Shown here one piece after another: positions 38,567 through 64,000 of a DNA stretch of 64,000 bases (its first letter is position 1; each line of letters starts with the position of its first letter). The DNA is from Ruditapes philippinarum (taxonomy: Eukaryota). Both the position numbers and the translations under genes were made by a program. The notes beneath the pieces were generated by a model. The model was not told the DNA's origin and made no database searches. It worked only from the letters and a program-made list of their open reading frames with translations. The stretch covers positions 62,001 to 126,000 of the forward strand of contig NW_026863267.1 in NCBI RefSeq assembly GCF_026571515.1, in the 5' to 3' direction.

Positions 38567-40036
38567 TTATATTTTAATGTATCCATTTTGTTTAGCTTTG
38601 AATTTTCTGTAAATAACGATTCCAATAAATGAAATCGAATAAAATATACTTAGAATAATTGACACTTGGAACAGTAAATCGTAATTTCCAGTTGTCTCTG
38701 ACGTGTACCCGCCGAAGTAACCTCCGAGGAAATTCCCAACTCCTTTTAATACATTCCATGTGGCGAATGACGGCGCGTAATCTTCCGTTCCGTAGATTTC
38801 GTACATAGCAACGGCTACGTGTGCATAGATGTTACCTATACATAGCCCGTTGATTAACGACGCGGCAAGAAGTCCGGCGTACGTGTCAACATACACTACA
38901 AGACCATGTGACACGGCCGTGACCAGAATCCAGTATCCCATATGAGTTGCACTACTAATTTTACACATGACCTTTGACACGGATCCCATTAGTCCACCAA
39001 TGAGGTTAGTAACGCCAATCATAGATATGAAAAACGAGCCGACTTGGCGTTCAAAACCTTTCAGTTCCACAAGATCAACAATAAAACGGCTTTCTGCAAG
39101 AGCAGTGAATGCTAAAATCACAGAATTCAATAATAGTAACCAAAATAATTTCTCTTTAAACAATGAAAATTTAAACAAGCTCTGTTTTGCAGACGCTGAC
39201 GTTTTGTTGGTGACATCCTTTGATGAATACCGTTGAGCAATGACCATCAACATTCCACATGGAACGGCGTTTAGACAAATAGCACCAATCACCATTAGAG
39301 CCCCATTCCAGTTATACGCTTCAATGCAAAGTTCCATAAAATAAGACATGGTAAACTGACCTAAACTTGAGCCTATTGAAACAAAACCGATCACCGCCGC
39401 TTTTTGGTTGTCAAAAATATCTCCGGCGACGACGAATGGTCCCATGTACACAATTCCAAAAGACGCACCAGACATGATTCCGACGAGAATTATAATCGTT
39501 GGCACATTTACTGCTAGAGAACTAACCGCCACACAAATACTGCCGACGACACCGCCAATAATAATACAGTAACCATATCCTATCTTCGACACTGGGAAAC
39601 TCCAAAGAGCACCACCCACGGCCAGTAAAGCTTCGAAGAAACTTTGGTTAAGTGCAACTAATGAACGGTCTGCCTCAAACACCCGAATCAACTGCGCGTA
39701 TAGAACGCTTAAACTGTACCCAAATCCCATTGATATCAAAATTGAAACCAAACACGCAAATACAACTAAAAGTTTTATCACAAAAGGTACCTCGTTATTT
39801 GATACGTTATGTCCTTCTTCTGTTGAATTGTCACTTATTTTGTCGTTATATTCAAATGACAAATTCTCTACAAACGCTTTTTCTCTTTCTCTCCAGCTTG
39901 AAGACGCTTCCGCAGCATTGTACATGACAGGCTCAGGCCATTCCTTCTCGATGTCTACGCCATTCTCCTCTTCTTTACCACTGTCAGTATAATGTTCGAA
40001 TTCCGAAGATAACAAGCGACGTTTCTCCTCTGACAT
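38567..40036 (-). CDS. Intronless MFS transporter, SLC16/monocarboxylate-transporter-like, 489 aa from the first ATG (MSEEKRRLL)
   Basis: About 12 hydrophobic segments in a 6+6 arrangement, with SLC16-like motifs (YNWNGALMVIGAICLN, FKFSLFKEKLFW, GGYTSETTGNYDLLF). The ORF-track start at 40084 is a TTG. Confidence 0.9.
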   Translation of the reverse strand: MSEEKRRLLSSEFEHYTDSGKEEENGVDIEKEWPEPVMYNAAEASSSWREREKAFVENLSFEYNDKISDNSTEEGHNVSNNEVPFVIKLLVVFACLVSILISMGFGYSLSVLYAQLIRVFEADRSLVALNQSFFEALLAVGGALWSFPVSKIGYGYCIIIGGVVGSICVAVSSLAVNVPTIIILVGIMSGASFGIVYMGPFVVAGDIFDNQKAAVIGFVSIGSSLGQFTMSYFMELCIEAYNWNGALMVIGAICLNAVPCGMLMVIAQRYSSKDVTNKTSASAKQSLFKFSLFKEKLFWLLLLNSVILAFTALAESRFIVDLVELKGFERQVGSFFISMIGVTNLIGGLMGSVSKVMCKISSATHMGYWILVTAVSHGLVVYVDTYAGLLAASLINGLCIGNIYAHVAVAMYEIYGTEDYAPSFATWNVLKGVGNFLGGYFGGYTSETTGNYDLLFQVSIILSIFYSISFIGIVIYRKFKAKQNGYIKI

Positions 40037-54844: not shown

Positions 54845-57800
54845 ATGAAGTTATACACAGCCAGTTTAGCACTTGCTTTGCTCTCTAGCAGCCTTTCATC
54901 AGCACTTCCTCCTAAAGAACACAAAGAACGTGTGCACGAACAGGTAAAGTTCTTACATTTGTTAAATTTAAAACTGAAAGAACTATTTAACAGTTTAAGA
55001 CTGAAATGGATAATGACAATACTCAGGATAACAAAACTTAATTGACATTTGTCAGTTTTATTTTTTATTAATGAGTTTGCTGAAAATTATTGCAGGTGAC
55101 ATGCTTCCCTAGGTCATTGTTTCAACAATATGTTTTTAATGCTATTTTATATCTCTTTAAAATTCAAATCTTTGACTTTGATATAACATTTGAAAGGTAT
55201 ACATTCAGTGTAAAAAATTAGGATTTGAATTGACTAGGCTGGACCAATAGATTGGAATATTCACTAGCCCAAAAGACATTTCACTAGCACGATTCATTTG
55301 TTCAAAACAGTTGTTTATATTGCCTCTGAAAATAGGAAGCCTGTTCGGGCTTGTTACTGTAAAAAGTTGGTAGCCCGAGGAGAAATTTTGTAGTCAGGGG
55401 CTATGGGACTACTGCTAATTTCAAACACTGTACATTCATGCACTCAAAAGCTTTGCGTGAAATAATAAAATGGAAGGTTAAACAATTACATGATTCAATG
55501 TTTACAGTTATATATAAAGAAACATAACATGATTAAAAAAAAAGTTGGAAAATGTATGTTCAAGATTTCGAAGAGATAGAACACTAGCTATTATCAAAAC
55601 TCTCTTCATCAAAAGTTTTACAATTTTCATAAAAAATTATTTCAAGAAGCTGATCATGAAAGAATCCTTTTGCTTTATTTAGAAATTAAGTGATCAAGAT
55701 CATGAGAAGGAAGGTGAGCACAACAACGACTATGACCATGATGCTTTTCTTGGTCAAAAAGAAGCCAGAGATTTTGATCAACTTACACCAGAAGAAAGCA
55801 AGGAAAAACTAGGGTGTGTATACCATAATAAAGTTAATATTTGAGCCGCGTTACGACAAAACCAACGTAATGGGTTTGCGACCAGCATGGATCCAGACCA
55901 GCCTGCGCATCCGCGAAGTCTGATCAGGATCCATGCTGTTCGCTTACAGACCCTATAACAAGTAAAGAAACTGAAAGCGAACAGCATGGATCCTGATCAG
56001 ACTGCGGGGATGTGCAGGCTGGTCTGGATCCATGCTGGTCGCAAATCCAATATGTTGGTTTTGTTGTGAAGCGGCTCATTTGATTTTAGCCAGATTCTTT
56101 GAGGATAAGAAGAGTAAATTATGTCATTGAAATTGTATGGATGATTTAAAGAAAATTCTCTTATACTTTGATTTTTGAATGGTGATGTACTTAGTCAGAT
56201 CACGGTCGAAGATAACCAAATCACATGACTCAGCGGAGACAGTTTTCGGTAAAGTTGGTCAGACTAAAGACCATTCTATTTGTAAGACCCTGATGGATGT
56301 AATTCACTAATTGTCACGGTTCGGAACTGTTCACTTAATAGGGGAGAAGATGTGTAAGCGGCCGGATAGCTCAGTCTGTAGAGTCAAGGAACGGTATTCT
56401 GAGGGTCCCGGGTTCGAGTCCCTGTCAGGCTGCATATTTTTTCTCACCCTGTGACACAATACTTTGATTTTGGTGCTTTGTGCCATTTTATATATACCTT
56501 GTTTTAAAATGATGTACACAATTACAACAAGATTAAATAAATGTGTGTAGTTTTGTTATTATTTAAAAATTCACAATGTATCTAAGTTAAATTCTTCACA
56601 AAGTATTTTCTTGGAATCCACAAGCGTTTGCAGTGCTGCCAAAGTGATTTTATATATATTGGTTAAATGAATTTCTTTACAGAATAATTGTGGACAAAAT
56701 AGACAGAAACCATGATGGTGTTGTAACTGAGGACGAGTTACAACATTGGATTCAGTATGTGCAGAAGAAATACGTCATCGAGGATACAGATAGAATGTGG
56801 AAAGAGCATAAACTGGATGATGCAGGCTTGAGCTGGGAATCGTACAGAAAAAATACTTATGGCTATGAATATGGTAAATCTTGATATCTTTTTCATTTTG
56901 TAATATCCATGGTGGTCTTTGTAATCTAAATAGATGCTTTTCACATACAAATTATTACCTCCCTTGGCTGTCATTTTAGGGGTTATTCCCTATAAGAATC
57001 TTACACCGGCTGCCGGTACAGACCGGAATATCTAGCTCGAGGGTAACTGTTTACAGCGGTAACGAGGCTCTGTCGAGTTTCCGCTAAACAGTTACCCGAG
57101 AGCTAGATATTCTCGTCTGTACCAACAGCTGGTGTTTGATTCTTTTTCTTGCATATAACATGTCAATTATTTTCGGAACAGAAATTATGAAAACTGATAT
57201 TCTCATTACGCACTTTTTTTTTATAGTAGTGTATGAACATAGAACTTCATTCATAACGAAAAATGACGTCATCCTAAGAACGCGATTCATTCATAAAAGG
57301 CGCGCGTCAATGACGTCATTTAAAGCACGCGACTTGTCTTACATGGGGGATGTAAGACAGAGTTTTCTAGCACCGGTGTAAACGGTTGATAATCCTGTCT
57401 GAGATGCAAGAAAATATATTCTTGCATATCAGACAGGATAATCTACTGTTAACACCGGTGCTAGAAAAAACGCCCCATGTAAGACAAGATTATTTAGTGT
57501 TTCTCATTTCTGAAAAAGAGCCCTTCTGATAGAAAAGTTGTTTTTTAAGAAAAATCTCCAGAACTCGTAAACCATACTGTAAACTTTGTTTAAATTTTGC
57601 ATACAGGTATCCTTTAAGGTATATAACTGACCTATGTTGTTAATTTTATAGTTCCTTATAGTGCCCGTTAGGGGGCTCATACCTTAAAATGATGTCATTG
57701 ACACATGCTTTTTATGAATGAATCACGTTCTAAGGATGATGTAATTTCTGTTCCGAAAAAAATTGACATGTAATATTCAAGAAAAAGAATCAAACACAGG

Positions 57801-60800
57801 CTGTCAGTATAGAAAGGAATATCTAGCTTTTTGGTAATTGTTAAGCAGAAACTAGGCATAGCCTCTTTACCACCATAAACAGTTGCCCTCAAGCTAGATA
57901 TTCCGGTCAGCAACAGCAGCCAGTGTAAGATTCTTATATATGCTAAAGATAAGATAAAAATCTCTCATAATTCTATCATCTTCAAATTCAATAAATGATT
58001 TACTTGTTATGTGAAATGAATGACTGATTTTGCAGTATTTATCACTACATTTTTACTGCATTAGTAAACCAGGAAGGGCTATTTTGACCACTGTTTGGTA
58101 ATTATAAATTACCATTTGCAATGTGTAAATTATTTTCTTTGTTCACTTGACAATATTTCACTTTTTAAATACATTTTCAAAATTTCATGAAAATTAGCAT
58201 AAATCTGGAGGCATGCCACTTTAAATCAAACAAAAACAGTAACACTAACATATTTCCAACATAAAAAGTAAAAATTATAGCCTTGATGATATCAATACAT
58301 TGTTATGCTGATGAACCATTTAGGCTTGCTTGATGCATTATGAATTTCACAACCTGTATGGCTACTAAATTATGAATAGTTTGAGCCGCATCACAACAAA
58401 ACCAACATAGTGCGTTTGCGACCAGCATGGATCCAAACCAGCCTGCGCATCCGCGCAGTCTGATCAGGATCCATGCTGTTCGCTATCAGTTTCTCAACTT
58501 GTAATAGGGTTGGTAAGCGAACAGCATGGATCTTGATCAGACTGCGCAAATGCACAGGCTGGTCTGGTTCCATGCTGGTCGTAAACCCATTATGTTGGTT
58601 TTGTTATGACACGGCTCAATTTTGTTTTATAGATCCTGAAGAGGCAGAGGATTTTAGTGAGATGGTAAACAGAGATACACGTAAATTTAAACAAGCCGAC
58701 GAGAATGGCGATGGGTATCTATCTAAAGAAGAATTTGCTTCCTTCTTACATCCTGAAGAACACGAGCATATGAAAGATATTGTTGTTTTAGTAAGTTGTT
58801 ATTTATTGATATGAAATAACCACCAGCTTGACTTAGTAGCACTAAATTCTTCTAAATTTGCAAAAAAAAATTTAAGAGAAAAAATTTTTAAGTTGTGAGT
58901 CTTGAAGGTTTATAAACTTTAAATCTGACTATTTAGAATCATAGGTTCATGTATGGCTTAAGCAGTTCATGCGATAATATGGATGTTTGATATTTTAAGT
59001 ATTTTGGGTGCGAGTTTCTTTCATAGATATTTACTTTTTGGTGTTTTAAGGTCAATTAAGGCTACTGTAGGTCAAAGTGGCTGAGGCTTATAATAGATTT
59101 TTCTTCTCATCCTGTAGTAGGGCCATGTTTGTTGTTTTGCCAAAGCACCTTAAATCAGCATGTAACAGTGTTACCAATAGATTCTCTCCATGATTAATGA
59201 TATTTTGGTTGGTTTTCCCAGTTTAACCAGGGTTATAAACAAACTTTAACAGTTACAACTTTGGTAATAAAAGGTTCAACAGGTTGAAATGTCTATCATC
59301 TTGAAGCTACATGTACAAGGCTAAGAGTTTGTTTGTACCTCTGGTGGATAAGCCTACATTTTCAGAGTTCCTGATAACATCTATATTCTTGTTTGAACTT
59401 TTCCCTGATGAATTTTGTAACAGATTTGCTCTGCTTTGCAATTGAAACTGTCCTTTCAAAGTAAAAAGGGATTTCATTCTCAAGATACAAAAATTGAGGT
59501 TCCATCAGTATAGAGCCTGGTCAGACTGCATGTTGGTAAAGGTATTCTTGTCAGTTTCTTTGAGAACTTATTTTGAATTATTTAGAAGAACTACCCATTT
59601 GTGCTTAATGCTCTTGTACTCTGTCCTGTTTTTGTTTTGTGTCCTACTGGGCTTTTTGCCGGTGGTCGTGTGTTGCTGGGTAGTGTTGCTGGGTAGTGTT
59701 GGGGGATGTGCTCATAAAATGCTGCCCTTTCTTGTAGATCTATGCTTTCATATTTTACTGCTTTAGATTTGAAAAAGGTTTTAAGAAGTTGAAGCAGTTG
59801 CCTTGCTTGTGGAAAGTATTAAACTGTACTTTTCTGTCTGCTCATTTAGACTGTACTGCACGGAATTCTCATTATCTTGATTGTGTCCAGTGGTATTGGC
59901 CGGTGATGTCAGCAAAATGATGTCATAGAATAATGTCAACATCATTGATTGACTTTGCGATATATTTTTGTGTCTAATATCTTTTGTTATAAAATTTGCA
60001 TGAATTTATTAGTTGTGTATATATTCTGGTACTATTTAACAAAACTGTTTGGAAAAAATTTCAATCCGTTTTTCAACCACAATGTCCACAGTCTAACATT
60101 GTTTTATGAATAGGCAGGACTAATAGGTTCTATATGTATAATATATATGAGAAAAAAAAAATGTTTTTAATACAAACATATAATTTTGTCATTTTCAGGA
60201 AACAATGGAAGATATAGATAAAGATAAAGATGGTAAAATCAGTTTAGATGAATATATAGGTATGTGAAACAAAGTATTCACCATTTTTTAATTACTTTAT
60301 CCCTGCTTATCCCACTTTAGGTCAGGTGGACAGATATTTATATTTGAGAAATGAAACTTTACAATTAGGTGAAGGTTACTAACAAAGACCCATAACTCTT
60401 GCATTTAAAGTTAAACTGAATTATCTCCCTTTTGTGAAGTAAGAAAAAAAGGTTTGTTAATACTTTGTAAACAGTGTTATCTTCTACCTTGCTGAGATTA
60501 TGTAAGGGCACTGTTTTTAGACAGCTTCCATTTGTATGCAGGACTCATTTCTTTTAATAATCAAAGTGTTTCGTATTTTTATGTAACATACTGTATAAGT
60601 GGATATTTATGCGTCACAAAAAATTTTGCGAATGTCTAAAAGTGCCATTATTGTAATTGTCCTATTCACTTGTTTAATACCTTAATTATTTATATAACTG
60701 TTTGCAACATACATTGACTAGGTTTGATAAAGGACCTGATTACACATTTCTTCGACATATTTTGAAATATTCTTTTGCTATATGAATAACCTATTGTGTT

Positions 60801-63045
60801 ATTAAGACATATATTGTTTCATTAAAACATTTCGGATTGAAAAGACCAAACTTATATAAACAAGCAATGAGAAAAAAATAATCTTAGTATCTGAACAGTC
60901 AAACTTATTCATCTAAGTTGCTGTATGAAAACTTGTTTTCAAATGATAGTTCTAAGAAAGTTTGCCTAAAAAGAAATAATTTTTGCATGCTCAAATATTT
61001 GAGAAAACATGATGTACTTTCAAATCGCAAAAATCACAAATATTTCCACGTCGCAAAATTATACAGTATTATAGAATTCTTGAGGCTATTCTGAATATTG
61101 AGGCTATTCTGAATATTGAGGCTATTCTGAATATTGAGGCTATTCTGAATATTGGGGCTATTCTGAATATTGAGTTTATTTTGAATAATTAATAGCTTAG
61201 AGTGATGAGACAACATTCACATTGTACATGTATAATGAAATGATATCCTCTTGGCTTACCACAGAACAGGAAATGATCATTTTAATATTGCTATGGTCAA
61301 GTTATGGTTGAGTACTTTTAAAAAAAGTGATCATCATTTTATGTAGAAATAAATTTTAGTGCTGTATGAATAAATCATAAAATTGACATATGCTTATACT
61401 TGTATACAAATTTTTAATGGTCTAACGGGCTATGGTATATTTTGTGGTGATGTCAAATCATTGTCTGCACTGTTTGTTATTCACTAAATACAATGTACTT
61501 ATATTGAAATTTTCCCTAGAAATGACCAGTGGTTTTTTCTACTGGTATATTGAATCATGGACAAGTCAGATAATTTAAATGTACAGGGCCAAAACACCCT
61601 TTTTGGGGAAGGGGCCTCAGCCTTTTTCTTGGGGAAAATATGCATTTTTGGCATACTTTGGGAAAAAGGGTCTCAAATTTAACACAAACATAAGTTATTC
61701 ATGATATTTACACTGATATTGGCCAGTATTGGACAAAGAATAAGAATTAAATTTAGTATGAAATCAGAGGAAGAATCTTTGCATGTAATGAGATAATTCT
61801 TCAAATTTGGAGGTTTAAAGGAGGAATTCCAAAATTTTGGAGTGAAAAATTCTGTATATTTTCAGTGTTTATTTGAAAATGTGTGAAATAACAAAGAGCT
61901 AGGTTCATTAATCACCAAAATTGGCCCCACCTCAGAAATTGATGAAAACCTCTCTAATAATAGTTTAAGATGTCTAATGGATAAAATTAACTTTGTTGAT
62001 CGTAAATACCTAACAATGACATCACGTCATCCTTTAATTAAGGCAATCAATCAATTTAGCGAGAAAAGTCAATGTCTGGAGCTATATTGTGAATTTTGAC
62101 ATCATTTTGAAAAGAATAAAAACCAACCCCAACAACTAGCCTGTGAGAATTTAATCCATTTATGAACAGAAAACAATTTTCTATTCCAACACCTGGATTT
62201 GTGGTTTTCTCAAAATTTTGAAGAAATAGTCTCTCATGATAAAATGTCTGAAATTAACAAATTGCATCTACAGCGGATATATATAATGAAGAAGATGATG
62301 ATGACGATGATGATGACGACGATGAAGAAGATAGTGATAAAGACGGGGTACCGGATTGGGTGGAGTCGGAGAAAGATCAATTTAAAAACTTCCGAGACAA
62401 AAACATGGACGGCTACCTCAATCTCGAGGAGGTCCGAGCTTGGGTCATACCAGAAGATTATGATAATAGTAAAGAAGAGACGAAACATTTATTCCGAGAA
62501 TCGGATGTGGATAGGGTTGGTTTTATTAAGCCTTGTCTATGTACAAATCATGTTTGCACCAAAATGGGCTTTTCTTCAGACACACTTTCATTCAAAATTG
62601 AAACAAAAATTAGTTAAATGTAAACATATCTGTTTTCATTTTTATTGCACTTTGGTTTTTAAGAATTTTTTAGAGTTGAAACATTATTTAAAATTTTCCA
62701 ACACTTTCAAAAATCAGATAAAATCAAAATTTACCATGAAATGAAAGTCCTTTCAAAAGACAGTCCATTTTGGTCAAATAATGAGTTTTAACAACCAGTT
62801 TCTTTGCAGTTGTAATAATATTTTATTGGTTTGTGTGCGCACTTTTAGGTGATATGTGGCCAAATAAAGACGAGGAAGAGCCTGAATGGGTAAAAGGAGA
62901 AAGAGAACAGTTCTCTAGTTATCGTGACACCAACGGCGACGGCTTCATGGACAAAGATGAAGTGAAAAACTGGATTATTCCACCAAATTATGATCATTCC
63001 GAGGCAGAGGCTAAACATTTAATCTATGAAACTGATGAAAATAAG
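54845..63045 (+). CDS. CALU: Calumenin/reticulocalbin (CREC family multi-EF-hand secretory-pathway protein), 3'-partial; exons 54845-54943, 55683-55813, 56683-56873, 58633-58790, 60199-60259, then 62274-62515 OR 62849-63045; last exon beyond the window
   Basis: Signal peptide, [28 protein letters not shown] loops [36 protein letters not shown] and [12 protein letters not shown], plus FLHPEE and [11 protein letters not shown]. Intron phases 0,2,1,0,1 are consistent. Confidence 0.93.
55842..56078. mobile_element. Palindromic MITE in a calumenin intron
   Basis: TGAGCCGC...GCGGCTCA with ~100-bp arms; second copy at 58382-58618. Confidence 0.85.
56312..56456 (+). mobile_element. 145-bp solo LTR containing a tRNA-like sequence (Helenus-type TRIM LTR)
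   Basis: taat|TGTCAC...GTGACA|caat. Internal 56358-56433 has A-box TAGCTCAGTCTGTAGAG, B-box GGTTCGAGTCC and acceptor-like pairing GCGGCC/GGCTGC. Confidence 0.7.
56991..57939. mobile_element. Two copies of one non-autonomous element joined tail-to-tail (foldback) in a calumenin intron
   Basis: TATAAGAATCTTACAC...ATGCAAGAA / TTCTTGCAT...GTGTAAGATTCTTATA; the right copy is interrupted at about 57490-57690. Confidence 0.75.
58382..58618. mobile_element. Palindromic MITE (same family as 55842-56078) ending 14 nt before a calumenin exon
   Basis: TGAGCCGC...ACGGCTCA followed by attttgttttatag|58633. Confidence 0.85.
60590..61068. mobile_element. MITE-like element with short TACTGTATAA / TTATACAGTA termini
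   Basis: Imperfect TIR TACTGTATAAGTGGATATTT...TTTTGCGA versus TCGCAAAA...AAATATTTCCAC...TTATACAGTA. Confidence 0.5.
61081..61172. repeat. 18-bp minisatellite (TGAGGCTATTCTGAATAT)x5
   Basis: Direct tandem units; accounts for the spurious LNIQNS ORF 61034-61216. Confidence 0.95.
62274..62515 (+). CDS. CALU: Calumenin alternative (acidic) exon 'a'
   Basis: ctacag|CG...AGG|gttggt, 242 nt, phase 1 to 0. Reads [81 protein letters not shown]. Confidence 0.8.
62849..63045 (+). CDS. CALU: Calumenin canonical exon 'b'
   Basis: ttttag|GT...AAG|gttcgt, 197 nt, phase 1 to 0. Reads [66 protein letters not shown]. Confidence 0.9.
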
Positions 63046-64000
63046 GTTCGTTTAATTTTGACTCGGAAAATTAATGGGAAACGAGGGTTCGGAAGGAGTT
63101 AATGGTTACAGTTATAATTATCGTTAGTGGTGGTAGTAACTTGTCTGTTCTAAATTTGTTCGTTTTTTTGGTTTTTGCATGCTTTTGGAATGAAGTTTTG
63201 TTCCATGTAATTTATATATTGCTAATTTAAAAAAAAAAAAAAATACGTTTAAATGGTGCATGTATCTATGTATGGTATATTTATACTCAAGATAAAAGGC
63301 GTATCAGTTGCATGCTTTATGGTGACAGTAAAAAAAAAACATAATTCATCAAAAGAAACAAAATGGAAACTTAAATATAAGATTTGGTTTCAAATATGTG
63401 ATTTTTTTTTTTTTTTTTTTTTTGAGACTGACAGAAAAGTTGGATTTGAGACCAACAGAAAAGTTTGAAATAGAAGGGTTTTTTTTGAATTTTTAGTAAA
63501 AGTGGCTATCAAAAAGTGAAAATTTCCATAAGGTGAAATAGGAAATCAACTTTCCTTTTTTTTTTCTTTTTTTTTTATAAAAAAGTTGATTTCCTATCTG
63601 GAAAATAGTTAACTGCCCACTATACATGTAAGAGAAAGTACTGTATAAGTTAACTACCCATCAAAAAAGAAAATGCTAAATTTCACGTATGCTACCTTCC
63701 CATTAGAAAGAGAGAACAATGTATAGAAAATAAATCAATATTTAAGTAAGAACAGGTGCTCTTGTAAATGTATTGATTGTTGATTGTGTGAAGAACAAAA
63801 ACACATTAAGACTTGAGATTTTATCGAAATTTAAAATGACTGTCATTAGATTAAATTCAACAGTATCACATTACATGCAGCTGTTAAAATGCAAAATTGA
63901 TCCACTTTTAGGATGTCAGGTGCTTAAGTAATTAGGTGTTCGTACTTAAACACAAATATTTTCCTTGTTATTCAACTTATTTGGAGTACAGTAAATTACT

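What the first reader, a model, noticed from the sequence alone, without database searches (positions are those of the whole stretch)
62274..63045. Calumenin carries a frame-locked mutually exclusive exon pair that switches a poly-Asp tract in or out
Seen: two tandem paralogous exons, 333 nt apart, encode the same penultimate EF-hand region. Both have intact 12-residue loops ([12 protein letters not shown] vs [12 protein letters not shown]) and both are phase 1 to 0, so including both or skipping both shifts the frame. Exon a is strongly diverged yet open, adds EE-D10-EEDSDKD, and has a weak acceptor. Known: vertebrate calumenin has mutually exclusive exons near the first EF-hand rather than here, and poly-Asp tracts typify mollusc shell-matrix proteins (Aspein/Asprich type). 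Inference: a splicing switch that gives an ER Ca2+-binding protein a high-capacity acidic isoform, possibly for mantle calcium handling or biomineralisation.
Basis: partly seen in the sequence, partly recalled or inferred. Interest (0 to 1): 0.82.

Follow-up and report, generated by a model that had tools for sequence, protein, structure and literature searches.

The report
Clam calumenin mutually exclusive exon pair
A clam calumenin gene carries two alternative copies of one exon, used one at a time in its mRNA, and one copy adds a run of acidic residues; the switch is real and shared across molluscs, but a role in shell building is not shown.

Summary
Exon a (62274-62515) and exon b (62849-63045) are homologous: 48% identity over 52 residues, E 3e-20. 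Both are phase 1 to 0 and lie 333 nt apart in a six-EF-hand calumenin-like gene that ends in HDEF.

RNA contigs from public runs join the upstream exon (ends 60259) to either a or b, and join either one to the last exon. No a+b joint was listed in four runs. One run that expresses the gene had no exon a contig.

The exon-a isoform is already in RefSeq as "calumenin-B-like isoform X1 [Ruditapes philippinarum]". The pair is old. Acidic a-type exons occur in annotated calumenins of many bivalves and gastropods and of Octopus. Four gene models read a then b in tandem, including one from an annelid tubeworm. Two gastropod cDNAs differ only by an a-type or b-type block and a 30-nt insert.

Exon a is under purifying selection but changes about 3.4 times faster than b. 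It swaps EF-hand 5, the first four residues of the EF6 loop, and a disordered acidic linker.

The shell hypothesis is untested. It is weakened by conservation of a-type exons in Octopus and a tubeworm, which build no mollusc-type shell. This is a new member of a known kind, of moderate interest.

The parts
58633..58790 (+). Constitutive exon encoding EF-hand 3
   Evidence: GT..AG joint 58790>60199 in RNA contigs of all four runs; sequence.
60199..60259 (+). Constitutive 61-nt exon (EF-hand 4 loop [12 protein letters not shown]). It ends one base into a codon and is the shared donor for exons a and b.
   Evidence: Sequence. Joint 60259>62849 in four runs, and a loose end at 60259 in X8 that reads the first 26 bases of exon a.
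62274..62515 (+). Exon a, 242 nt, phase 1 to 0. It encodes the acidic linker, EF-hand 5, the entering helix of EF6 and the first four residues of the EF6 loop. Weak acceptor; donor AGG|GTTGGT.
   Evidence: RNA contigs cover 62336-62520 in X1, X4 and X8 and run on into last-exon sequence in X1 and X8. Identical in RefSeq-named protein P0248.
62288..62344 (+). Acidic tract EE-D10-EE-DSDKD (GAT/GAC/GAA codons)
   Evidence: Translation; tandem repeat 62286-62325; pLDDT below 50 at residues 222-236 of the AlphaFold model of P0248.
62396..62431 (+). EF-hand 5 loop of exon a ([12 protein letters not shown])
   Evidence: Canonical D, N, D, G and E at loop positions 1, 3, 5, 6 and 12.
62516..62848 (+). 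333-nt intron between exons a and b
   Evidence: Zero contig depth at 62604-62757 in all four RNA runs. Not conserved with the orthologous intron of L010.
62849..63045 (+). Exon b, 197 nt, phase 1 to 0. Canonical calumenin-type EF-hand 5 region; donor AAG|GTTCGT.
   Evidence: Joined to 60259 and to the last exon in all four runs. Identical in P0256.
62926..62961 (+). EF-hand 5 loop of exon b ([12 protein letters not shown])

Best explanation
This is a pair of mutually exclusive homologous exons in the single calumenin-type (CREC family) gene of a clam, most likely Ruditapes philippinarum.

Every mature mRNA takes exon a or exon b between the EF-hand 4 exon and the last exon. The choice replaces the EF4-EF5 linker, all of EF-hand 5, the entering helix of EF6 and the first four residues of the EF6 loop (DVDR against DENK).

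Exon b gives the canonical form that resembles the single EF5 exon seen in arthropod and vertebrate calumenins. Exon a gives a form with a roughly 15-residue longer, disordered acidic linker and a diverged but intact EF5. Net charge of the exon product is -24 for a and -11 for b.

Exclusivity is enforced at least by the reading frame. Both exons are 2 mod 3, so a+b gives a stop 14 codons into b, about 150 nt before the last junction, which makes the transcript a candidate for nonsense-mediated decay. Skipping both gives a protein truncated after 13 out-of-frame codons, without EF5, EF6 or HDEF.

The following steps are inferred, not shown:
- The choice is regulated through the weak acceptor of exon a, which would need an activator.
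- The acidic isoform has more low-affinity Ca2+ binding capacity, or altered partner binding, in the ER and secretory pathway.

The duplication is ancient. It predates the split of bivalves and gastropods, and probably that of cephalopods and annelids too.
For: Anatomy.

RNA:
- Introns have zero depth and constitutive exons are joined at GT..AG, so the runs behave as RNA.
- 60259 is joined to 62849 in all four runs.
- X8 has a contig that runs from 60259 into the first 26 bases of exon a.
- In X1 and X8 the exon-a contig continues into the same last-exon sequence that follows 63045.
- No 62515>62849 joint is listed.
- X19 expresses the gene but has no exon a contig.
- 18 runs from 12 studies hold exon a, and 6 sister runs hold none of its sampled words.

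Proteins: P0248, named calumenin-B-like isoform X1 of R. philippinarum, sits on a contig of 152585 bases, the same length as this window's contig, and carries exon a exactly. P0256 carries exon b.

Conservation:
- Ten exon-a-like ORF clusters at 55-100% identity keep the acidic tract, the loop and the donor.
- L010 has the a and b exons in tandem with the same phases.
- Between the window and L010, pN is 0.18 for exon a and 0.053 for exon b, with pS 0.74-0.84, which is saturated.
- L017 and L029 are two cDNAs of one gastropod, about 99% identical (98.7-99.8%) in the shared parts. They differ by a 227-nt a-type block against a 215-nt b-type block, both 2 mod 3, and by a separate 30-nt insert.
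- a-type exons occur in named proteins of 10 bivalve, 9 gastropod, 1 cephalopod and 1 annelid species. Four gene models read a then b.
- In the exon tree, all 18 a-type exons form one group together with one long-branch Owenia exon, with support 85/89. The a label needs 2 changes against 14 for shuffled labels.

Structure: EF5 and EF6 are modelled with block-mean pLDDT of about 79-92, and the acidic tract has pLDDT below 50.
Against: Absence of an a+b transcript rests on assembled contigs of four runs, and contigs drop rare variants. Nonsense-mediated decay has not been shown in this animal.

Tissue or stage regulation is only suggested by presence or absence among coded runs. No binding or functional data exist for either isoform.

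With 55 columns, the AU test rejects neither a single a clade (p 0.15) nor a clam-specific a+b clade (p 0.17). The Octopus and Ridgeia a exons are long branches that move in the quick tree. For those two taxa, the ancient origin rests on shared architecture rather than on the tree.
Confidence: 0.85

Rival explanations
1. The a isoform is a biomineralisation isoform. Mantle or larval shell-field cells would switch to exon a to make a poly-Asp calumenin that handles calcium for the shell or enters the shell matrix.
For: Calumenin is listed among shell matrix proteins of Crepidula fornicata (PMC9365450; supplement entry 120526, 332 aa). The nr protein called calumenin-like [Crepidula fornicata] (P0198, 331 aa) is a-type. 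Calumenin rises after shell damage in Mya truncata (PMC6111077). Exon a use varies between runs.
Against: a-type exons are kept in Octopus vulgaris and in the tubeworm Ridgeia, which build no mollusc-type shell. The a isoform keeps the HDEF retrieval signal. The tract is about 15-20 acidic residues in an otherwise ordinary CREC protein, not an Asp-dominated protein. There is no peptide-level or tissue-level evidence, because the runs are coded.
Confidence: 0.15
2. Exon a is a recent, lineage-specific duplicate in venerid clams, and the acidic exons of other taxa arose independently.
For: The AU test does not reject a clade uniting the clam a and b exons (p 0.17). Acidic low-complexity tracts evolve easily.
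Against: Within the genome, a and b are only 48% identical, with saturated synonymous sites. The bivalve and gastropod a exons group together in both trees. They also share the order a then b, the phase, the position of the acidic insert and the IPEDYD motif, against IPPDYD in b.
Confidence: 0.03
3. Exon a inclusion is splicing noise or an unproductive decoy, with no protein function of its own.
For: Weak acceptor, and no exon a contig in some runs.
Against: The frame is open and the EF loop canonical in every orthologue seen. pN is far below pS. Exon a contigs are present in 18 runs from 12 studies. The a-only mRNA is in frame through to HDEF (P0248).
Confidence: 0.03
4. Exclusivity is imposed by competing RNA base-pairing (a docking and selector arrangement) rather than by the frame and splice-site strength.
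For: An 18-nt, 83% complementary pair links 62119-62136 in the upstream intron with 62507-62524 across the exon a donor (I17).
Against: The duplex energy is not better than shuffled introns (fraction 0.12-0.24), and no equivalent pairing exists in L010 (fraction 0.93). Introns are not conserved between the two species.
Confidence: 0.07

Closest known systems
Mutually exclusive homologous exons of vertebrate CALU (calumenin-1 and calumenin-2/crocalbin)
   Same: Same protein family (CREC, six EF-hands, HDEF end). Same device: two tandem homologous exons, one used per mRNA, swapping an EF-hand region.
   Different: The vertebrate pair encodes the first EF-hand and arose in jawed vertebrates (PMC4494069). 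The pair here encodes EF-hand 5 and the start of EF6, adds an acidic linker, and was seen here only in molluscs and one annelid; the arthropod and vertebrate calumenins in the search showed only b-like exons. It is therefore an independent event.
RefSeq isoform models of mollusc calumenin (for example calumenin-B-like isoform X1 of Ruditapes philippinarum, isoforms X1/X2 of Physella, Pecten, Saccostrea and Mercenaria, and isoform X1 of Aplysia)
   Same: These models already contain the a or the b exon. P0248 is this gene's a isoform, residue for residue in the exon a region.
   Different: They are automatic predictions without description. No paper in the searched library describes the exon pair, its exclusivity or its age. 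Some deposited models fuse a and b into one protein: P0189, P0204, P0211 and P0226.
High-capacity acidic Ca2+ buffers of the ER/SR lumen (calsequestrin, calreticulin C-domain) and Asp-rich shell proteins (Aspein/Asprich); comparison from general knowledge
   Same: A disordered run of Asp/Glu residues in a lumenal or secreted Ca2+-binding protein.
   Different: The tract here is only about 15-20 residues, sits between two EF-hand pairs, and is optional by splicing. The protein is otherwise a standard CREC member with a retrieval signal. No homology to those proteins was found.

Membership tests
CREC family (calumenin/reticulocalbin) | Multiple (six) EF-hand motifs | tested here: met
   EF-hand Pfam matches on the exon peptides: one exon passes the curated cut-off, the others fall below it because they are fragments. 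Full-length P0248 and P0256 carry precomputed EF-hand Pfam families. The AlphaFold model shows the helix-loop-helix units.
CREC family (calumenin/reticulocalbin) | C-terminal HDEL-like retrieval signal | tested here: met
   The last exon (L009 4854-4958, outside the window) ends in HDEF then a stop. Both P0248 and P0256 end the same way.
CREC family (calumenin/reticulocalbin) | N-terminal signal peptide | tested here: inconclusive
   The first exon begins with a hydrophobic stretch after the start codon, modelled as helix 2-20. No signal-peptide predictor was available.
CREC family (calumenin/reticulocalbin) | Sequence homology to named calumenins | tested here: met
   1357 full-length relatives at E <= 1e-30. 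The 120 listed are either unnamed or named calumenin, reticulocalbin-3 or hypothetical protein; they include P0248, which holds this window's exon a.
Mutually exclusive homologous exons | Adjacent tandem exons that are homologous | tested here: met
   333 nt apart, 48% identity, E 3e-20.
Mutually exclusive homologous exons | Same phase, so the frame is kept only when exactly one is used | tested here: met
   242 and 197 nt, both 2 mod 3. Stops follow double inclusion or double skipping.
Mutually exclusive homologous exons | Mature transcripts contain one or the other, never both | tested here: met
   a-only and b-only contigs share the same flanks, and no a+b joint appears in four runs. P0248 and P0256 match the two forms. 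A gastropod cDNA pair, L017/L029, shows the same. Limit: contigs cannot exclude rare a+b forms.
Mutually exclusive homologous exons | Both copies conserved across species | tested here: met
Vertebrate CALU exon 3/4 pair (orthology) | Same exon position (first EF-hand) | tested here: not met
   The pair here is at EF5. No duplicate of the EF1/EF2 exons exists in this gene. The vertebrate pair dates to jawed vertebrates.
Asp-rich shell matrix proteins (Aspein/Asprich type) | Protein dominated by Asp, secreted into the shell, no ER retrieval signal | tested here: not met
   The acidic tract is confined to about 20 residues of a 328-aa CREC protein that ends in HDEF.
Asp-rich shell matrix proteins (Aspein/Asprich type) | Mantle-specific expression | not testable with these tools
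   Run identities and tissues are coded, and read laying was limited to one call.

The most novel reading that the evidence does not exclude
The a/b switch may be an ancient lophotrochozoan device, older than the mollusc-annelid split. It would toggle the single calumenin gene between a canonical ER-resident form and a high-capacity acidic form that travels with secretory cargo. In shelled molluscs the acidic form would have been recruited into calcifying secretions; the Crepidula shell proteome entry is a-type.
Probability: 0.15. Interest if true: 0.65.

Novelty: new member of a known kind. Interest (0 to 1): 0.4.

Why it matters
The CREC family now has a second, independent case of mutually exclusive EF-hand exons, besides vertebrate CALU. 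This one appears to have been kept for hundreds of millions of years in molluscs, and probably in annelids.

It gives a clean natural experiment on the C-terminal EF-hand pair and on an acidic linker in a secretory-pathway Ca2+-binding protein. The two isoforms differ in one defined module and can be compared directly.

It also flags a practical point. Several deposited gene models fuse both exons, and expression or proteomic studies that report "calumenin" in stress, immunity or shell repair do not separate the two isoforms.

Tried and rejected
Exons were searched one by one by reference, and the full-length isoforms used are database proteins (P0248, P0256) or unbroken cDNA loci (L017, L029).
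- RNA pairing between the upstream intron and the exon a donor (I17) is not better than shuffles and is absent in L010. Rejected as evidence.
- Intron conservation between the window and L010: none.
- The idea that exon a corresponds to the vertebrate reticulocalbin EF5 exon (both preceded by Ala, YIAD) was rejected. Vertebrate RCN exons group with vertebrate CALU (95*), not with a-type.
- AU tests on the 55-column exon alignment are underpowered and decide nothing (p 0.15 and 0.17).
- dN/dS proper could not be computed because synonymous sites are saturated. Only pN and pS are given.
- Contig depths for a and b were in the same range in the three runs that hold exon a. The tool warns that contig depth cannot rank parts of a gene, so no isoform ratio is claimed.
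- An Rfam scan of the introns at 58800-62270 found nothing.
- No other paralogous exon in the gene and no second copy of exon a in the genome.
- The earlier scan note near this place (an SLC16-like gene at 38567-40036) has no bearing on this finding.
Full report
**What is in the sequence**

The window is G000:C11754:62001-126000. The region holds the 3' part of a calumenin-type gene on the + strand. Its exons are:
- 58633-58790, encoding EF-hand 3;
- 60199-60259, encoding the EF-hand 4 loop and ending one base into a codon;
- exon a, 62274-62515;
- exon b, 62849-63045;
- a last exon just outside the window (L009 4854-4958, window-equivalent 66853-66957), which ends in HDEF and a stop.

Exon a has AG at 62272-73 and GT at 62516-17. 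Exon b has AG at 62847-48 and GT at 63046-47. The intron between them is 333 nt.

Exon a encodes 80 full codons, with the tract EE-D10-EE-DSDKD and the loop [12 protein letters not shown]. Exon b encodes 65 codons with the loop [12 protein letters not shown]. The two peptides are 48% identical over 52 residues, E 3e-20. Both lengths (242 and 197 nt) are 2 mod 3.

Exon b read in the frame left by exon a stops after 14 codons. The last exon read in the frame left by skipping both stops after 13 codons, counting the junction codon. No other exon of the gene is duplicated, and exon a has no second copy in the genome.

**RNA evidence**

Eighteen public runs from 12 studies hold most sampled words of exon a. 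Six runs from the same studies hold none.

Four runs were laid on 58600-63200. Their contigs cover exons and leave most intron bins at zero; depth inside introns falls on repeat-like segments. They join 58790 to 60199 at GT..AG, so they behave as RNA.
- In all four runs, 60259 is joined to 62849.
- In X8, a contig leaves 60259 and continues with the first 26 bases of exon a. The joint itself was dropped by the tool's repeat filter at the GAT tract.
- In X1 and X8, the exon-a contig runs past 62515 into the same sequence that follows 63045 in the exon-b contigs. That sequence is the start of the last exon.
- The exon-a and exon-b contigs in X1 (301 and 256 letters) are the size expected for two arms of one assembly bubble with shared flanks.
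- No 62515>62849 joint is listed.
- X19 comes from the same study as X1 and expresses the gene, but has no exon a contig.

Contigs cannot prove absence, and the tool warns that their depth is not a measure of level. I therefore claim only three things: a-only and b-only mRNAs exist, a+b was not seen, and exon a use differs between samples.

**Database proteins**

I did not build a joined protein. Searches were made exon by exon or with unbroken cDNA loci.

A full-length search returned P0248, named calumenin-B-like isoform X1 [Ruditapes philippinarum]. Its source contig has 152585 bases, the same length as this window's contig. Its sequence carries exon a exactly, followed by the last exon. 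P0256, from Logan, carries exon b in the same context. The window is therefore most likely from the Manila clam, and its a isoform is already an automatic RefSeq model.

**Conservation**

A word search with exon a found ten clusters of ORF fragments at 55-100% identity. All keep an acidic tract, the EF loop and a GT right after the exon end.

A scan of metagenome contigs gave L010, which holds an a-type exon (62% identical to exon a by tblastn) and a b-type exon (91%) in tandem with the same phases. Between the window and L010, non-synonymous differences per site are 0.18 for a and 0.053 for b. Synonymous sites are saturated at 0.74-0.84. Both exons are under purifying selection, and a changes about 3.4 times faster.

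L017 and L029 are two metatranscriptome cDNAs of one heterobranch gastropod, about 99% identical (98.7-99.8%) in the shared parts. Each has a full ORF ending in HDEF. They differ by a 227-nt acidic a-type block against a 215-nt b-type block, placed exactly after the same split codon, and by a separate 30-nt insert.

Named proteins with a-type exons come from:
- bivalves: Ruditapes, Mercenaria, Dreissena, Saccostrea, Crassostrea angulata, Mytilus coruscus, Pecten, Ylistrum, Sinanodonta and Solemya;
- gastropods: Elysia (two species), Aplysia, Physella, Biomphalaria, Candidula, Littorina, Crepidula, Batillaria and Patella vulgata;
- a cephalopod: Octopus vulgaris.

Four gene models read a then b in a row: Crassostrea angulata, Solemya velum, Elysia marginata and the annelid Ridgeia piscesae. 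All arthropod and vertebrate sequences in the list have only the b-like form.

**Exon tree**

The tree used the 55 residues after the acidic linker. All 18 a-type exons fall in one group, together with one long-branch Owenia exon, with support 85/89. The a label needs 2 changes against 14 for shuffled labels.

The alignment is short, and the AU tests decide nothing. In a second, quicker tree, the Octopus and Ridgeia a exons wander as long branches, while 16 bivalve and gastropod a exons stay together.

I conclude that the duplication predates the bivalve-gastropod split. Its presence in the cephalopod and annelid lineages is supported mainly by shared architecture: the acidic insert at the same place, the order a then b, and the same phase. 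Vertebrate reticulocalbin exons group with vertebrate CALU, so exon a is not their counterpart.

**How it most likely works**

*Shown:*
- The swap replaces the EF4-EF5 linker, EF-hand 5, the entering helix of EF6 and the first four residues of the EF6 loop (DVDR or DENK, before the shared DGVLTKQE).
- Both versions keep canonical loop residues.
- The exon products differ in net charge, -24 against -11.
- In an AlphaFold model of P0248, EF5 and EF6 are confidently folded, and residues 222-236, the acidic tract, have pLDDT below 50. The tract is thus a flexible linker between the EF3/4 and EF5/6 pairs.
- The frame lock makes any product other than a-only or b-only defective.

*Inferred:*
- Exon b is the default choice, because the exon a acceptor is pyrimidine-poor (45% against 65-75%) and would need an activator.
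- a+b transcripts, if made, are removed by nonsense-mediated decay.
- The acidic form offers additional low-affinity Ca2+ sites, or changes partner binding, in the secretory pathway.

A candidate RNA pairing across the exon a donor is no better than chance and is not conserved.

**The shell hypothesis**

Literature shows calumenin among Crepidula shell matrix proteins, and shows its rise after shell damage in Mya. The Crepidula calumenin-like protein in nr is a-type.

Against a shell-specific role:
- the a exon is kept in Octopus and in a tubeworm;
- the protein retains HDEF;
- the tract is short.

Tissue use could not be read because the runs are coded. I rate this reading at about 0.15.

**Comparison with what is known, and novelty**

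The vertebrate CALU exclusive exons encode the first EF-hand and arose in jawed vertebrates (PMC4494069). This pair is at a different position and, in these searches, was seen only in molluscs and one annelid, so it is independent.

The isoforms exist as automatic models in RefSeq. Four literature searches found no description of the exon pair. I class it as a new member of a known kind: a real, ancient, regulated exon switch, of moderate interest. Its biomineralisation link remains a lead to be tested.

**Limits**

- The last exon lies outside the window.

Noticed in passing
L017 587-591 / L029 529-555: The two gastropod cDNAs also differ by a 30-nt in-frame insert (ten residues, DADNGGLSSN) between EF-hands 2 and 3. 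This points to a second alternative splicing event, a micro-exon or an alternative splice site, in the same gene.
   Followed up: partly
L024 3007-3207 and 4607-4804; L011 663-860: A contig of an unidentified animal (JAAUYG010272829.1) has an intact Glu-rich first exon followed 1.4 kb later by a b-type exon with two in-frame stops. Another contig of the same project (L011) has that b exon intact. This may be a decayed copy or haplotype.
   Followed up: partly
L013 1271-1479 and 1861-2057: Another unidentified animal (JAAUYA010034235.1) has a tandem pair of EF5 exons with the same phases, but the first copy is not strongly acidic. It could be an a-type exon without the tract, or an independent duplication.
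   Followed up: partly
P0204, P0211, P0189, P0226 (database proteins): Deposited gene models of Crassostrea angulata (isoform X3, 400 aa), Solemya velum, Elysia marginata and Ridgeia piscesae contain both the a and b exons in one protein. They are probably mis-joined models, or rare seven-EF-hand forms that use an internal donor.
   Followed up: no
P0043 (database protein): A 243-aa model from an unnamed source repeats the same EF5 exon plus what looks like read-through intron twice, nearly identically. This suggests a very recent tandem duplication or an assembly artefact in another organism.
   Followed up: no
window 59370-59680: An intronic segment has very high contig depth in all four RNA runs. 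It is a dispersed repeat with a core of about 130 nt. The first look found 794 candidate copies in the genome, and the 39 other copies scored are 77-88% identical. No Rfam match.
   Followed up: partly
window 55778-56079 and 58303-58573: Introns carry copies of a repeat whose ORFs share a motif (…AWILIRLR…[11 protein letters not shown]…WFC), on both strands. It is probably a transposable-element fragment.
   Followed up: no
window 62452: All three runs that hold exon a read G instead of A. The change is synonymous (Pro CCA to CCG), so it is a polymorphism relative to the assembly.
   Followed up: yes
L014, L015, L025, L027 (metagenome contigs with about 5 kb upstream flank): Several host-derived contigs in host-associated metagenomes hold only a b-type EF5 exon, with no a-type exon within 5 kb upstream. 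The source animals are unknown, so it is unclear which lineages lack the pair.
   Followed up: no
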